DNA of 64,000 bases, taken from IMG/VR virus record IMGVR_UViG_3300042319_002138, positions 124,001-188,000 of that record; one strand, given 5' to 3'. The number at the start of each line of letters is the position of its first letter. Position 1 is the stretch's first letter. Below, piece after piece: positions 39,965-64,000 of this stretch. The notes beneath the pieces are model-generated. The model did not search any database. It saw nothing but the letters and a program-made list of their open reading frames with translations, and was not told the origin of the DNA. The translations under genes and the position numbers were made by a program.

Positions 39965-40360
39965 TTATGGAACAAATATTTGTAATTGTCCAGCACTTAC
40001 AGTAAAATCAGGTTTTTTCATCACGGTGATTGTGACCAGATTCCAATGATTTGTTTCTAATTTTTCAGGATTAATAATAACATTTAAATTATCACCACCT
40101 TCTCTTGAAACTATAAATCTTCTATTAGGTCTTATTTCATTATCTATAATACTATAAATTATTTCATCTTTAGCATCCTCAAGTAGGTTAATAATGTCAT
40201 AATCATATATTTTTTCACCACTCCCGTGTCTCCATTTTCTTTGTGCTGTATGACCACCTGTATCATGATATAAGTCAAAAGTAAAAGTAATTTCACTACT
40301 TAACTCATGAAATTTTTCTTCCCTTAAGATAGTTTCTTTTATTAAAGATTTAATATTCAT
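39965..40360 (-). CDS. putative head-internal protein
   Basis: N-terminal IKSLIKETILREE motif. Late-type motif 5 nt upstream on the - strand. Confidence 0.6.
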   Translation of the reverse strand: MNIKSLIKETILREEKFHELSSEITFTFDLYHDTGGHTAQRKWRHGSGEKIYDYDIINLLEDAKDEIIYSIIDNEIRPNRRFIVSREGGDNLNVIINPEKLETNHWNLVTITVMKKPDFTVSAGQLQIFVP

Positions 40361-40364
40361 ATTT

Positions 40365-40378
40365 TATAAATATTTATA
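40365..40378. promoter_or_regulatory. palindromic divergent late promoter TATAAATATTTATA
   Basis: Perfect 14-bp palindrome containing ATATTTAT on both strands, between divergent genes. Confidence 0.55.
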
Positions 40379-40437
40379 TAAGTATTAAACGATATACTTT
40401 TAAAATAAAATTAATTAAAATTAAAAATAAAAAGGCT

Positions 40438-40767
40438 ATGAAAAAAATTATTGAGTTTGTAAAAAAATATAAAATCTACATTTTATCGGGATTATTATTT
40501 ATCTTCTTTTTCCGTTCTTGTATTAAATCAGGTGAGGTAAGAAAGTTGGATAAAATTAAAACTAAAAATGAAAGAGTTATTGATAGTTTAACTTCTGTTG
40601 TTAACGGACAAAAAGACACTATTAATAATATTTCTGAAGTAATTAGAATGGAAAAAATTAGAGTCCATAGAAATTATGATAATTATATTTCTTCTAAAGA
40701 CAGGGGTGACCAATTAATGGAACTCCATATGGTTGTGAAAAAAAATATTAAAGAACTAGAAAAATGA
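40438..40767 (+). CDS. membrane-anchored coiled-coil protein (spanin-like candidate)
   Basis: N-terminal TM segment ending FFRSC, followed by a coiled-coil. Confidence 0.45.
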   Translation: MKKIIEFVKKYKIYILSGLLFIFFFRSCIKSGEVRKLDKIKTKNERVIDSLTSVVNGQKDTINNISEVIRMEKIRVHRNYDNYISSKDRGDQLMELHMVVKKNIKELEK

Positions 40768-41723
40768 GAAAAATAATTAATTGGGTTAAGGACAACCCAA
40801 ACAGAAGTATGTTCTTGTTACCTATTATATTGGTAGCAGGAATTTCTATTTCACACGTTGTTTCTTGGTATGATATTACTAACCCATTTAGTTGGGCAGT
40901 TTACTTATCAGTCGCTATTGAAATAGGTGCTATGACAGCTTTGGTCGCAGCAACAAATAAAATGAAAGGTGGGGTTTGGTTTATGTTTGGATTGATTACA
41001 CTAATCCAAATGATTGGTAACATATTCTTCTCATTTAAAGAAATTGACGCAAACGGTTCTTTATTTAAATCTTGGGTTGAACTTACGGGTCCACTTTGGG
41101 ATATGATTGGTTCAGATTCTACCGATGTTGTTTCCATGAAAAGATGGTTGGCATTTTTAGAGGGTGGATTACTACCTATTATATCACTAACCTCACTACA
41201 TTTCTTTGTTAAGTATGAAAAATCTAATTCCCCAAAAAAGGAAGAGATTTCTCCAAATGAAGAGGTAATTACTGTAAATCAAGTACAAATTGAAGAAACC
41301 AATTCCCCAAAAGAAGATGAAAACTTGTTTCAAGAAGAGGTTTATTTACCTACAAAGGAAGAGGCTTTAATCGAAATAAATGAGACTCTTAATAAAGAGG
41401 TTAAAAAAGTTTGGGCAAAAGTTGAGGAATTAAGAGAAGAAAGTAAATTACCTGAAACAACAGAAGAGGATGATTCATCTGAACCTACCACTTTAGCTAA
41501 TTCTGAATATAGACTAGAAGAAATTAATGAGGAGGATGATGAACAACCATTGTTAGTTGAAGAAGAAAATCCTGAAGATGAAATAATTATTCCCATGACA
41601 GGAGACACTAGAGTAGTTGAAGTTGGAACAGATATTAAAGCTGGAAAAACTTTGGGTGATGAATTAACTAAAAGTTGGAATAGAATAATCAAAAAAAATA
41701 ACACTATCGATAGATTAGGTTAA
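40764..41723 (+). CDS. multi-pass membrane protein with acidic C-terminal tail
   Basis: About 4 hydrophobic segments, then a Glu-rich region. Confidence 0.6.
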   Translation: MRKIINWVKDNPNRSMFLLPIILVAGISISHVVSWYDITNPFSWAVYLSVAIEIGAMTALVAATNKMKGGVWFMFGLITLIQMIGNIFFSFKEIDANGSLFKSWVELTGPLWDMIGSDSTDVVSMKRWLAFLEGGLLPIISLTSLHFFVKYEKSNSPKKEEISPNEEVITVNQVQIEETNSPKEDENLFQEEVYLPTKEEALIEINETLNKEVKKVWAKVEELREESKLPETTEEDDSSEPTTLANSEYRLEEINEEDDEQPLLVEEENPEDEIIIPMTGDTRVVEVGTDIKAGKTLGDELTKSWNRIIKKNNTIDRLG

Positions 41724-61769: not shown

Positions 61770-62154
61770 ATTTAATTTTGACAATTCAATAAATTTTAAT
61801 TTTAATTCTTACACTGTTAATGCGGGTGCAAGAACAATACGTGCAACATGGTCACCCGAATTAGCACAAGATTTACAAGCATACCACGGGATAGACGCTG
61901 AGGCTGAATTAACGAGGTTATTATCTGAGGAATGGGCTAGAAGTATTGATAGAGAAATTATTAATACTCTTCTTGCTCAAGATTTAATAACCGTACAACC
62001 ATTAGGCCGACCAATCGGTCATCTTTTTTATTTCGATTCCCAATACGAAACATTCGAACCTAAAGTTTATGACGATGGTTCTTGGAGTCTAAAAAATATT
62101 TTTGAAAGTTCCATTGGTTTTAAAATAGAAATATCCCCACATAAGTTTATTTAA
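61729..62154 (+). CDS. permuted gp23 fragment protein with tags at both ends
   Basis: PIRKIPKFNF; RTIRATWSPELAQDLQAYHGIDAEAELTRLLSEE..IDREII; then AQDLITVQPLGRPIGHLFYF. Ends ISPHKFI. Confidence 0.85.
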   Translation: MGELHLEPIRKIPKFNFDNSINFNFNSYTVNAGARTIRATWSPELAQDLQAYHGIDAEAELTRLLSEEWARSIDREIINTLLAQDLITVQPLGRPIGHLFYFDSQYETFEPKVYDDGSWSLKNIFESSIGFKIEISPHKFI

Positions 62155-62191
62155 TTAATTTTGCCGATATTTATTGTTAAATGAATTTAAC

Positions 62192-62512
62192 GTGCAAAAT
62201 AACCTTTTCAATAGATTTTTATTGTTATTGGGATTTTTTAAATTTAAAAAAACTGAATCAAAAGATGAGGCTTTTAATAGATTAAAAAAATTAGTTCTTT
62301 CTGTTAAAAATAGGGAGGATTTAATTAATGCTGTTAAACTAATAAACCACTTTAATAAAACTTATGAAATAAATCCTGAATCAGCGGAATTTATTTATTT
62401 TAACAAAATAGTTAATTTAATGAGATTGATTATTCGTAAAAAACATAAGAAAAGTGGTGACAAAAATGACGAGGGTCAGTGGAAATGCGAAATAGAATTA
62501 GAAAGATATTAA
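62192..62512 (+). CDS. hypothetical protein
   Basis: ORF listed from 62174. In-frame GTG 62192 is more likely given ATATTTAT at 62167. Confidence 0.5.
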   Translation: MQNNLFNRFLLLLGFFKFKKTESKDEAFNRLKKLVLSVKNREDLINAVKLINHFNKTYEINPESAEFIYFNKIVNLMRLIIRKKHKKSGDKNDEGQWKCEIELERY

Positions 62513-63855
62513 AAGAAAATTCTGATGAGTTAGGTAATTGGTTTAATGAAATCGAACCGACCTTTAAAAATTGGAATTTTGAGTTTGATGGTAAACACGA
62601 ATATTGGGTCGATTTAACTAAAATGACTAAAGATGAAATTAGTGTTGTTGCTGATTACATTTTAAAATGTTTACCAAACATTAGTGGGTTACGAAAAACT
62701 AAGTTTAAAAATTTAGGAGATTATGATGGTGTTGTCATTCATTGCGGTAGTGAAGATAATGATTATTATCCCACAGAAAATTATGTATGTTTTATGGAGT
62801 TTTCTTTTGATGATGACGAAGAAAAAAATAATAGTATTTATATTGACGGTAGAGAAGTGTATGAGTACATCAAAATCAAAGAAGAACAAAATTTAAAAGA
62901 AAGTTTAAATTGGTCTGATAAAGACACAATTAATTGGGATAAAGACCCTAATTGGGGTACTGATAACTATTATGGCCCTGACACTAACAATTGGACAACC
63001 GATACAGCAAAAAGCCAATGGGTACAAGGTGATGGAGGTGGTGTCTCAAAATCATCAGAAGATACAATGTCAGAAGAAGATGAAATAGAATTTGGTGACG
63101 ATTTTGATTGGGCTAAAAATACTGGGGTACAACCAAATTATAATGGACATCCACAAGGTGTGGTTTATCTTCGTGACCATGATGAAATTGATGAATTTTG
63201 TGATATTATAGAAACTTATAATGGTGGTGAATTACCTAGAGGTAATGTAAGAGAAAATTTACATAGTGGTTTAGAAAATAGTAGGGATGAATTAGAGGGT
63301 AGTGACTATAACCCTTCTAATGCTGTAATATCAGTCTCATTTTTTGTAGAAAAAAACAAACCCAGTTTATTGTCCGTTGGTTATTGGGGTTATGATGTAG
63401 CTGACAGGTCAATTTTTGAATGGTTAGAAGATGGTGACACATTTAACAATGAATATGAATTATATACCAATTTAAATCAAGTTAAAAAGGTTTTTGAAGA
63501 TTATCAAAATCCTGAATTAGTGAAAGAATCTACTGACCCAGAATGGGAGTGGCTAAATGATGTACCTGTTACAATCCCATTTGAAATGGTTGAATTACAT
63601 AAAAAATATAAAATAGAAGTAAAAGAAGATTTACGAGACGCTATTGAGTCATGTGGTGATAATTCAAGAATATTTGTACAAGGGTATTACGGTGTTGTCA
63701 CCAAAACTGATACAATATCTTATAATCGAATACATTGTGATTCAGAAATAGAAGATGAAGTTTTTACTTTACAATTATATTTTTATGATATAGATGATAA
63801 TAAAATTAGTTACTTTTGGGTATCCTCTAATATGGTAGATTTTTACGAAATATAA
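62485..63855 (+). CDS. modular acidic head-internal (poly)protein
   Basis: MRNRIRKILKENS leader. Internal LKESLNW, MSEEDE..FDW and VKESTDPEWEWL modules. Confidence 0.6.
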   Translation: MRNRIRKILKENSDELGNWFNEIEPTFKNWNFEFDGKHEYWVDLTKMTKDEISVVADYILKCLPNISGLRKTKFKNLGDYDGVVIHCGSEDNDYYPTENYVCFMEFSFDDDEEKNNSIYIDGREVYEYIKIKEEQNLKESLNWSDKDTINWDKDPNWGTDNYYGPDTNNWTTDTAKSQWVQGDGGGVSKSSEDTMSEEDEIEFGDDFDWAKNTGVQPNYNGHPQGVVYLRDHDEIDEFCDIIETYNGGELPRGNVRENLHSGLENSRDELEGSDYNPSNAVISVSFFVEKNKPSLLSVGYWGYDVADRSIFEWLEDGDTFNNEYELYTNLNQVKKVFEDYQNPELVKESTDPEWEWLNDVPVTIPFEMVELHKKYKIEVKEDLRDAIESCGDNSRIFVQGYYGVVTKTDTISYNRIHCDSEIEDEVFTLQLYFYDIDDNKISYFWVSSNMVDFYEI

Positions 63856-64000
63856 TGAGAAATTTAATTAAAAAAATATTAAAAGAATCTACTGACCCAG
63901 ATTGGGCATGGCTAGATGAGATACCACCAATTATAGATGGTTGGGATTTATATCATAACAAATTAAAAGGTGAATCTTTTACAATAAATCTTAAATCTGA
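63855..64000 (+). CDS. putative head-internal protein, 3'-truncated by window edge
   Basis: Manual translation MRNLIKKILKESTDPDWAWLDEIPP..., TAATG-coupled. Confidence 0.65.
   Translation, partial: MRNLIKKILKESTDPDWAWLDEIPPIIDGWDLYHNKLKGESFTINLKS

What the first reader, a model, noticed from the sequence alone, without database searches (positions are those of the whole stretch)
39965..64000. Dispersed family with an N-terminal 'I(K/R)K(I/V)L(K/R)E[ES]' leader: putative capsid-targeting propeptide
Unrelated ORFs start with the same amphipathic basic leader ending in L-x-E: 39965 (IKSLIKETILREE), 44264 (MKSLIKQVLKEE), 47523 (IVKRILKEE), 60627 (IRKVLREE), 62485 (IRKILKEN) and 63855 (IKKILKES). 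Looser versions occur in 44097, 46187, 42309 and 54608. Most follow the ATATTTAT motif. T4 prohead protease gp21 cleaves after [LI]-x-E, and T4 internal proteins carry a cleavable capsid-targeting sequence. Inference: a packaging signal that loads diverse cargo (nuclease, peptidase, unknowns) for injection.
Basis: partly seen in the sequence, partly recalled or inferred. Interest (0 to 1): 0.7.

Follow-up and report, generated by a model that had tools for sequence, protein, structure and literature searches.

The report
Shared N-terminal leader, likely capsid-targeting propeptide
About one gene in fifteen of this uncultured T4-like giant lake phage starts with the same short basic leader ending in Ile/Leu-Lys/Arg-Glu; it most likely marks proteins for loading into the assembling head and trimming by the head protease, but no virion or cleavage data exist.

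Summary
The window lies in a fragment of a giant phage. A 100%-identical 226-kb contig (G001) carries a T4-type head module: terminase, gp20 portal, gp21 prohead protease and gp23 capsid protein. In G001 a relaxed leader pattern hits 18 times in 261 ORFs, 16 of them in the first 30 residues (shuffle expectation 0.05). A separate, complete 380-kb relative gives 20 of 24 (expectation 0.11). Codons differ between copies, so selection acts on the peptide. Apart from the 62485/63855 pair, the proteins share no similarity beyond the leader.

The leader reads Φ-[KR]-x-Φ-Φ-[KR]-E. This fits the L/I-x-E rule of T4 gp21 and resembles the T4 gp24 propeptide (LLRE|S). It also sits on the two ORFs just after the protease gene. 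In that head-module family, 37 of 37 distant homologues keep Φ-x-E at the domain boundary. Leader genes are enriched for ATATTTAT, the motif that precedes portal, protease, sheath and baseplate genes.

The capsid-targeting propeptide reading is therefore well supported by context but unproven (about 0.55). Delivery into the host is less certain. Three of the four "looser" members are not supported.

The parts
39965..40360 (-). 131-aa ORF with a type-1 leader, MNIKSLIKE|T (nt 40360-40334), followed by a second site ILRE|E (to nt 40319). An ATATTTAT motif lies at 40366-40373 (- strand), 13 nt before the ATG.
44264..44533 (+). 89-aa ORF with a type-1 leader, MKSLIKQVLKE|E (nt 44264-44296). The cargo is basic (pI 9.7). 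The G002 orthologue keeps the leader.
47523..47906 (+). 127-aa ORF with a 22-residue type-2 leader, MKKVIRLTELDLTRIVKRILKE|E (nt 47523-47588). ATATTTAT lies at 47510-47517. A GH24 lysozyme gene follows directly at 47977.
60627..61529 (+). 300-aa ORF with a type-1 leader, MKKTIRKVLRE|E (nt 60627-60659). ATATTTAT lies at 60614-60621. The C-terminal domain is PD-(D/E)xK-like, on weak evidence.
62485..63855 (+). 456-aa acidic ORF with a type-1 leader, MRNRIRKILKE|N (nt 62485-62517). It has an internal leader-like copy, ELVKE|STDPEWEW, with Glu348 (nt about 63517-63531), and no internal start codon or promoter motif there.
63855..64000 (+). First 48 codons of a 142-aa ORF that ends at window-equivalent 64283. 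It carries a type-1 leader, MRNLIKKILKE|S (nt 63855-63887), followed by TDPDWAWLDEIPP.
44097..44261 (+). 54-aa ORF, MAKVLRYNEEEFVTLLENIVKRVKKE|Q. It is a marginal type-2-like leader. ATATTTAT lies at 44053-44060.
   Evidence: 6.5 bits, E 0.27
46187..47155 (+). It is NOT supported as leader-bearing, although it has ATATTTAT 23 nt upstream. The same negative result applies to 42309-42860 and 54608-55807.

Best explanation
The leader is a portable N-terminal prohead-targeting and processing propeptide of the T4 capsid-targeting-sequence (CTS) kind.

Proposed mechanism:
1. Genes carrying the leader are transcribed with the structural genes.
2. The positively charged amphipathic leader (net +1 to +5) binds the very acidic scaffold core of the assembling prohead. 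Its pattern is Φ at P7, P4 and P3, and K/R at P6, P5 and P2.
3. The gp21-family protease then cuts after the invariant Glu (Φ-Φ-K/R-E|E/S/N), removing 9, 11 or 22-25 residues and freeing the cargo inside the head.
4. Some cargo, such as the leader-bearing lysozyme, is then probably delivered into the host with the DNA.

Shown: the leader family itself, its strict N-terminal position, its modularity, the T4-type head machinery, and the conservation of Φ-x-E at domain boundaries.

Inferred: late co-expression, binding to the core, cleavage, retention in the head, and ejection.
For: (1) Statistics and replication in two genomes.

(2) Selection acts on the amino acids, because synonymous codons vary.

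(3) The head module is T4-type: Portal_T4 250 bits, Peptidase_S77 95.6 bits, Gp23 237 bits. The catalytic His and Ser are conserved.

(4) The known T4 gp23 cleavage Glu65 aligns with LINE|T here and with IVSE|A in Flavobacterium phage immuto.

(5) T4 propeptides read directly from the T4 record are IPII/IPIII MKTYQEFIAE|A and gp24 MAKINELLRE|S. These are hydrophobic at P7/P4/P3 with Glu at P1, as here. PMC9026906 section 2.6 assigns targeting to residues 4 and 7 and processing to residues 8 and 10 of the IPIII sequence.

(6) The two ORFs directly after the protease gene carry the leader in G001, G002 and L071.

(7) In that 'GGYDD' head-module family, 37 of 37 homologues (18-62% identity) have Φ-x-E 1-3 residues before the conserved GYD. 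P2 is free to vary, type-1 and type-2 leaders are interchangeable, and the motif is kept internally in fused forms.

(8) The leader behaves as a swappable module:
- Homologues of 47523 swap the type-2 part for a third leader type but keep LLKEEAEE.
- P0046 carries the same leader on a Pfam PF01784 protein.
- L015 holds a distant relative of 60627 without the leader.

(9) AlphaFold models show the leader as a low-confidence detached helix ahead of a confident body (pLDDT about 60 and below 50 for the leaders).

(10) ATATTTAT is the top upstream 8-mer in G002. It precedes the portal, protease, sheath, tube and gp25 genes. It is enriched before leader genes: 8/16 against 42/245, P=0.004, and 10/20 against 74/438, P=0.001.

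(11) One leader protein is a second GH24 lysozyme, in addition to the leaderless lysozyme at 47977. A lysozyme is a plausible cargo for a head-internal ejected protein.

(12) T4's ipII-ipIII-e-nudE neighbourhood resembles the window's order of leader gene, lysozyme and, further on, Nudix.
Against: - There is no proteomic, N-terminal or expression-timing evidence. The metatranscriptome contigs were too sparse and the protease-substrate co-fold gave no answer.
- Cargo is mostly strongly acidic, unlike T4's IP proteins, which PMC9026906 describes as basic.
- In a subset, conservation continues past the proposed cut (xDDFDW[IV]). So the functional unit may be longer than a removable peptide.
- Hydrophobic residues spaced i, i+3, i+4 are a general property of amphipathic helices, so the match to T4's determinant positions is weaker than it looks.
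- The leader shows no sequence homology to the T4 IP capsid-targeting sequence.
- The phage also encodes ClpP and a ClpC/B-like ATPase, which could read N-terminal tags.
- Leader-versus-body conservation between G001 and G002 orthologues is mixed (pooled 65% against 46%, with exceptions).
Confidence: 0.55

Rival explanations
1. The leader is a gp21 cleavage and core-association signal, but the proteins are accessory scaffold or core components. Like T4 gp67, gp68 and gp22, they would be degraded and expelled before DNA packaging, so they are not injected cargo.
For: The leader sits on the head-module ORFs next to the protease. Most leader proteins are acidic, like the putative scaffold. In T4 the core proteins are cleaved and mostly leave the head (PMC9026906 section 2.5).
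Against: At least 16-20 unrelated, fast-evolving proteins per genome is more than a scaffold would plausibly need. They include a lysozyme-domain protein and a nuclease-like protein. The models show compact folded bodies.
Confidence: 0.17
2. The leader is an N-terminal recognition tag or interaction helix unrelated to the capsid. Candidates are a degradation or chaperone tag read by the phage's own ClpC/B-like ATPase, ClpP or DnaJ, a membrane- or nucleic-acid-binding amphipathic helix, or an oligomerisation helix.
For: The phage encodes ClpP (195 bits), a two-ring Clp ATPase, DnaJ and FKBP. From my own recall, not tested here, ClpX N-terminal motifs of the form Met-basic-Φ-Φ-Φ exist. The leader is a basic amphipathic helix. 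The DFDW extension suggests a binding element.
Against: This reading does not explain the invariant Glu with free P2 at domain boundaries in 37 of 37 head-module homologues, the leader's presence on head-module genes, the internal copies at domain junctions, or the link to the structural-gene promoter motif.
Confidence: 0.15
3. The proteins are diverged paralogues of one ancestral gene, and only the N-terminus has stayed recognisable. The leader would then be a family signature rather than a portable signal.
For: 62485, its internal repeat and 63855 share about 30 residues. The DFDW subset shares about 25 residues.
Against: Cargo lengths run from 78 to 620 residues with different predicted folds: a beta domain, a helical GGYDD domain, a GH24 lysozyme and a PD-(D/E)xK-like domain. 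One cargo family carries either of two leader types, and one leader occurs on different cargos. Paralogy would not exclude a targeting role anyway.
Confidence: 0.08
4. The motif is a chance or compositional by-product of an AT-rich genome rich in Lys, Ile and Glu, or an mRNA-level signal around the start codon.
For: The genome is 31% GC, and MKK-type N-termini are common in it.
Against: Shuffling within each N-terminus gives 0.05 expected against 16 observed, and 0.11 against 20 in G002. Synonymous codons vary (ATT/ATC/ATA; AAA/AAG/AGA/CGT), while Glu and the hydrophobic classes are invariant among the matched leaders.
Confidence: 0.02

Closest known systems
[quoted passage not shown]
   Same: A short N-terminal peptide (10-19 aa in T4; 9, 11 or 22-25 aa here) shared by otherwise unrelated, fast-evolving proteins. 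It ends in L/I-x-E. It is hydrophobic at P7, P4 and P3. The phage has a gp21-family protease. The genes lie outside the head module, some next to the lysozyme gene.
   Different: There is no sequence homology to MKTYQEFIAE. The leader here is strongly basic. Cargo is mostly acidic. The family is far larger (at least 16-20 proteins per genome, against 3-4 in T4). At least three leader types exist. A subset has a conserved DFDW extension after the putative cut. Nothing has been tested experimentally.
T4 gp24 vertex-protein propeptide (MAKINELLRE|S), and the gp21-cleaved propeptides of gp23, gp67, gp68, gp22 and Alt
   Same: The sequence match is closest here: Φ-x-x-Φ-Φ-R-E|S in 10 residues. Cleavage is after Glu with L/I at P3. 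The gp23 cleavage site aligns with this phage's capsid protein.
   Different: This clade has no gp24 paralogue; a Pfam Gp23 search finds a single full-length capsid gene. The leader is on non-capsid proteins.
Propeptides of giant phages phiKZ, 201phi2-1 and SPN3US
   Same: Many head and ejection proteins (19 in 201phi2-1) are trimmed after Glu by a diverged gp21-like protease. Some of them are cut internally (PMC9026906 section 3.2).
   Different: Those cleavage sites show very few determinants besides the Glu (PMC9026906). From my own recall, P3 is a small residue (S/A/G) there, whereas it is I/L here. No shared, recognisable leader sequence is reported for those phages. Those phages belong to a different lineage from this T4-core phage.
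Leader family of Flavobacterium phage immuto (seen here; I found no report of it)
   Same: This T4-like Bacteroidota phage has the same head-gene order. Three unrelated ORFs start M(E)NFDLKKFLVENKLT..N..(I/L)(L/I)(K/N)E|, and the small ORF after the protease has FLKE|S.
   Different: The upstream targeting part has a different sequence. There are fewer members in the 75 kb examined.

Membership tests
T4-type CTS / gp21-processed propeptide | The phage encodes a gp21-family (Peptidase_S77) prohead protease with its catalytic residues | tested here: met
   Not present in the window or its 95.6-kb record. Present on the 100%-identical 226-kb contig at 95.6-95.7 bits. T4 His85 and Ser140 fall in invariant alignment columns.
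T4-type CTS / gp21-processed propeptide | A short N-terminal peptide ending in L/I-x-E | tested here: met
   In 36 N-terminal leaders from two genomes, P3 is I or L in 36/36 and P1 is Glu in 36/36. These counts are partly fixed by the search pattern. The Glu lies at residue 9, 11 or 22-25.
T4-type CTS / gp21-processed propeptide | The same leader on otherwise unrelated proteins, i.e. portability | tested here: met
   No BLASTP similarity beyond the leader. Leader types are swapped on one cargo family. Cargo differs between genomes.
T4-type CTS / gp21-processed propeptide | Sequence homology of the leader to the T4 IP capsid-targeting sequence (MKTYQEFIAE) | tested here: not met
   Only the hydrophobic/Glu pattern is shared. 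The charge is opposite.
T4-type CTS / gp21-processed propeptide | Expression together with head genes (late) | tested here: inconclusive
   The shared ATATTTAT motif is enriched before leader genes. Public metatranscriptome contigs were too sparse to show transcripts or 5' ends.
T4-type CTS / gp21-processed propeptide | Proteolytic removal of the leader in proheads | not testable with these tools
   Needs virion mass spectrometry or an in vitro cleavage assay. The co-fold of protease and substrate gave no answer.
T4-type CTS / gp21-processed propeptide | The leader is sufficient to encapsidate a foreign protein, and the cargo is ejected into the host | not testable with these tools
   No isolate or host is known. 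The phage is known only from lake-water metagenomes.
phiKZ-type giant-phage propeptides | Cleavage after Glu with a small residue (S/A/G) at P3 (P3 preference from my own recall) | tested here: not met
   P3 is I or L in every leader. The head genes are T4-core.
Sec/Tat/lipoprotein signal peptides | A hydrophobic core of 7 or more residues after a basic N-region | tested here: not met
   The leaders alternate K/R with I/L and end in Glu followed by acidic residues. There is no hydrophobic stretch.

The most novel reading that the evidence does not exclude
A clade of 300-380-kb T4-like phages of freshwater Bacteroidota uses a readable N-terminal 'address label'. It comes in at least three interchangeable leader types, all ending in Φ-x-E. 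The label would load 20 or more diverse, mostly acidic proteins (4-6% of the predicted ORFs counted here, including a lysozyme and a nuclease-like protein) into the head. Internal copies would act as polyprotein-style cut sites. Packaged and injected effectors could then be predicted from sequence alone in uncultured giant phages.
Probability: 0.35. Interest if true: 0.75.

Novelty: new variant of a known kind. Interest (0 to 1): 0.62.

Why it matters
If the leader is a capsid address label, it gives a sequence-only way to list the proteins that uncultured giant phages carry in their heads and may deliver into the host. Proteins of this class include anti-restriction and host-takeover factors in T4. 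Here it would flag about 16 ORFs in G001 and 20 in G002, nearly all of unknown function, as priority candidates.

It would also show that the T4 targeting principle is old and has diversified. The part upstream of the cut changes between lineages, while the Φ-x-E cut site stays.

Finally, it would offer a natural tag for loading proteins into phages of Bacteroidota.

If the reading is wrong, the family is still a strikingly conserved, portable N-terminal module that needs an explanation.

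Tried and rejected
- **Isolate phage records.** Nucleotide and protein searches of the GenBank phage collection with window DNA and with the 62485 and 60627 proteins found nothing. Only the capsid protein finds distant T4-like relatives.
- **Family libraries.** Pfam and PHROGs gave no significant family for any strict leader protein of the window. PHROGs gave nothing for ten large upstream ORFs.
- **Large protein database.** The 63855 protein has only 3 homologues there.
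- **Leader-plus-DFDWI DNA pattern in IMG/VR.** It gave only 13 loci. Most are N-terminal and all lie in AT-rich contigs.
- **Fold search of the 47523 model.** No match.
- **Fold search of the 60627 model.** Only non-significant PD-(D/E)xK hits.
- **T4 gp68 against the GGYDD family profile.** No relation. PHROGs also found nothing for that family.
- **Co-fold of the protease with the 44264 protein.** The verdict was 'no answer', which is not evidence either way.
- **Public RNA runs.** Only a few short contigs lie on the window, so there is no information on transcript ends or timing.
- **Rfam on the whole window.** No hits.
- **bS21 gene, for a link to the published bS21 huge phages.** It is present in G002 but not in the 70%-complete G001, so that link is left open.
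- **Leader versus body conservation between G001 and G002.** The result is mixed and is not used as a main argument.

Full report
**Where the window comes from.** The window is bases 10461-74460 of a 95.6-kb, 31% GC virus record that CheckV rates 29% complete. IMG/VR holds 100%-identical contigs of up to 226 kb. I assembled the 226-kb one, G001, from fetched pieces. Window coordinate equals G001 coordinate minus 124000. The sequence occurs in at least 20 lake-water metagenome runs.

G001 carries a T4-type head module:
- a T4-like large terminase
- a gp20 portal (Pfam Portal_T4, 250 bits)
- a gp21 prohead protease (Peptidase_S77, 95.6 bits)
- a very acidic scaffold-like protein
- a gp23 major capsid protein (237 bits)

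The nearest isolates by capsid protein are Microcystis phage Mel-JY01 and Flavobacterium phage immuto, at about 42-44% identity. A related contig, G002, is 380 kb and rated 100% complete. It has the same protease and a single capsid gene. The window therefore belongs to a giant T4-like phage, probably of freshwater Bacteroidota. The host assignment is an inference from these relatives and from PMC9723584.

**The observation.** All six strict leaders are at the stated coordinates. In the 95.6-kb record the strict pattern occurs six times, always in the first 30 residues, and five of the six start at residue 3-5. In G001 a relaxed pattern gives 18 hits in 261 ORFs, 16 of them N-terminal. Shuffling each N-terminus gives a mean of 0.05 and a maximum of 2. 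The positional binomial P is 1e-13. The pattern was chosen after seeing the data, so I repeated the test unchanged on G002. It gave 24 hits in 458 ORFs, 20 of them N-terminal, against a shuffle mean of 0.11.

Several further checks agree:
- All-against-all BLASTP shows no similarity beyond the leader, except between 62485 and 63855. Those share 32 residues, and 62485 has an internal copy at residue 345.
- Codon use differs between copies, and third positions carry the most variation. Selection therefore acts on the peptide, not on a DNA or RNA repeat.
- Orthologues in other contigs (L007, L008, L014) keep the leader.
44097 is a marginal match to a longer leader type.

**Anatomy of the leader.** Pooling 36 N-terminal copies, and counting back from the invariant Glu as P1, gives this profile:

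| Position | Residues |
|---|---|
| P7 | I/L/V |
| P6 | K/R |
| P5 | mostly K |
| P4 | I/V |
| P3 | I/L |
| P2 | K/R |
| P1 | E |
| P1' | E (25), S, N, D, T |

There are two short registers:
- MN(I/L)(K/R)KII(K/R)E, with the Glu at residue 9
- M(K/R)x(L/I)I(K/R)KILKE, with the Glu at residue 11

A longer 'type 2' form is MKKVI(K/R)L(N/T)ExDLxx(I/L)V(K/R)(K/R)I(I/L)(K/R)E, with the Glu at residue 22-25. A third type, M(R/K)RxDKxxxIxEANxRLE, also exists.

Other features:
- A subset continues after the Glu with xDDFDW(I/V).
- Leaders carry net charge +1 to +5. The cargo is mostly acidic, with a median pI of 4.8.
- AlphaFold models of 47523 and 60627 place the leader as a low-confidence helix or coil, detached from a confident body. 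In 47523 it is a helix at residues 9-23 with pLDDT about 60. In 60627 residues 1-25 have pLDDT below 50.
- A few internal copies lie between domains of longer proteins, with no internal start codon or promoter motif.

**Link to head assembly.** T4 sequences were read directly from the T4 record:
- IPII and IPIII: MKTYQEFIAE|A
- IPI: ...TITE|A
- gp24: MAKINELLRE|S
- gp21: LLIE|T
- gp22: LIAE|A

PMC9026906 (section 2.6) reports that in the IPIII capsid-targeting sequence, residues 4 and 7 govern targeting and residues 8 and 10 govern processing. Those are positions P7, P4, P3 and P1, exactly the positions conserved here. The T4 gp24 propeptide is nearly a copy of the leader's last seven residues.

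The protease alignment keeps T4 His85 and Ser140. The T4 gp23 maturation site LTE65|A aligns with LINE|T in this phage and with IVSE|A in immuto.

The strongest link is positional. The two ORFs directly after the protease gene carry a type-2 and a type-1 leader in G001 and in G002. In a third relative, L071, both of these ORFs carry type-2 leaders.

An exhaustive HMMER search with the second of these ORFs (the 'GGYDD' family) found 44 representatives. All 37 that include the upstream region have Φ-x-E 1-3 residues before the conserved GYD. P2 is free to vary (K, T, N, D, A, S, L...). Either a type-1 or a type-2 leader can be present, and the motif is kept internally when the domain is fused behind other domains. 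A hydrophobic P3 and a Glu at P1 with any P2 is the T4 gp21 rule.

Homologues of the window's 47523 protein tell the same story. Some replace the type-2 part with the third leader type, yet LLKEEAEE stays invariant. The cut-site part and the upstream part thus behave as separate modules.

**Co-regulation.** ATATTTAT occurs 99 times in G001. Fifty-one of these lie within 60 nt upstream of a same-strand start codon, where about 3-4 would be expected from the fraction of sequence involved. The preferred spacings are about 13 nt and 22-26 nt. In G002 it is the most common 8-mer upstream of start codons (76 genes).

The motif precedes the portal, protease, tail sheath, tail tube and gp25 baseplate genes. 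It is enriched before leader genes: 8/16 against 42/245 (P=0.004) and 10/20 against 74/438 (P=0.001). Most of the remaining leader genes sit directly downstream of a gene that has the motif.

This supports late co-expression but does not show it. In related bS21-encoding huge phages, the protease gene and the hypothetical gene downstream of it appear to be co-transcribed with the structural genes (PMC9723584). Public RNA contigs for this phage itself were too sparse to use.

**Cargo.** Most cargo has no known family. One leader protein (G001 70439-71476) has a GH24 lysozyme domain (65.7 bits). The window also holds a leaderless GH24 lysozyme at 47977-48435, which I take to be the endolysin. 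A second, tagged lysozyme fits a virion-borne lysin.

The 60627 protein has a D...D-L-I...Q-V-K motif. Its best fold hits are all PD-(D/E)xK nucleases, but none is significant. The HExxH protein at 54608 has no supported leader.

**Mechanism and rivals.** The best-supported reading is a T4-type capsid-targeting and processing propeptide. I put confidence in targeting plus cleavage at about 0.55, and lower for ejection into the host.

The main caveats are:
- there are no virion or cleavage data
- the cargo is acidic
- the DFDW extension lies beyond the proposed cut
- hydrophobic residues spaced i, i+3, i+4 are generic to amphipathic helices
- the phage encodes its own ClpP and a ClpC/B-like ATPase, which could read N-terminal tags

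The rivals are:
- core components that are degraded rather than injected
- a tag unrelated to the capsid
- diverged paralogy
- composition or an mRNA signal, which is effectively excluded

**Comparison with known systems and novelty.** The system works like the T4 capsid-targeting sequence. It meets the sequence-level and context-level criteria for that class. It is not homologous to the T4 IP leader, and the functional criteria could not be tested here.

It differs from T4 in:
- scale (at least 16-20 proteins per genome)
- charge
- the existence of several interchangeable leader types
- internal copies

Phage immuto has its own, different leader that also ends in (I/L)(L/I)(K/N)E. This suggests lineage-specific address parts on a conserved cut site. 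My two literature searches did not surface a report of this leader family; they were not aimed specifically at it. I rate it a new variant of a known kind.

Noticed in passing
window 61533-61769 and 61729-62154: Two small ORFs match pieces of the major capsid protein gp23: Pfam Gp23 profile positions 304-366 at 26 bits and 132-195 at 65 bits. They are in permuted order, with the C-terminal piece first. They lie just downstream of the PD-(D/E)xK-like gene at 60627. They are conserved in relatives L007, L008 and L014 but absent from G002. They may be remnants carried by a mobile nuclease gene, or a functional mini-protein.
   Followed up: partly
window 40366-40373(-), 44053-44060, 46164-46171, 47510-47517, 47956-47963, 51490-51497, 54588-54595, 60614-60621: ATATTTAT is a promoter-like motif. 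It is the most common upstream 8-mer in the relative G002. Its first base lies either 12-16 nt or 20-26 nt before the ATG. It precedes structural genes. The short spacing would imply nearly leaderless mRNAs. A phage sigma-70-family gene lies at window 36497-37312.
   Followed up: partly
G001 34690-35082; G002 158962-159501 and 159791-160249; proteins P0040-P0045: There is a third N-terminal leader type, M(R/K)RxDKxxxIxEANxRLE. In some homologues of the window's 47523 protein it replaces the type-2 leader, while LLKEEAEE is kept.
   Followed up: partly
G001 25003-25527 (L019:15003-15527) and 44 database homologues: A head-module protein family with an invariant G-Y-D..M..H motif, helical in the alignment. 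It has no Pfam or PHROG family and no relation to T4 gp68. It always lies between the protease and the scaffold and capsid genes.
   Followed up: yes
G001 85975-86664(-), 6316-8799(-), 22297-23376; window 53652-54584, 55858-56271, 59085-60612: The phage encodes ClpP, a two-ring ClpC/B-like ATPase, a glutamine-synthetase-like gene inside the head module, DnaJ, an FKBP isomerase and two adjacent Mom-family (DNA modification) genes.
   Followed up: partly
window 58320-58900: An ORF-free gap of about 580 nt follows the DUF2828/DUF7788 gene (56877-58319). No Rfam family reached its threshold anywhere in the window.
   Followed up: partly
L044:2661-3961 and L069:1803-2318 (Flavobacterium phage immuto): Three unrelated immuto ORFs share a different leader of about 24 residues, M(E)NFDLKKFLVENKLT..N..(I/L)(L/I)(K/N)E. 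The small ORF after its protease gene has FLKE|S. Only 75 of the 160 kb were scanned.
   Followed up: partly
protein P0046 (1038-nt metagenome contig): The exact type-2 leader of 47523 (MKKVIRLTESDLERIVKRILKEEAEEK) is joined to a protein whose precomputed Pfam hit is PF01784. This is either a natural cargo swap or an assembly chimera.
   Followed up: no
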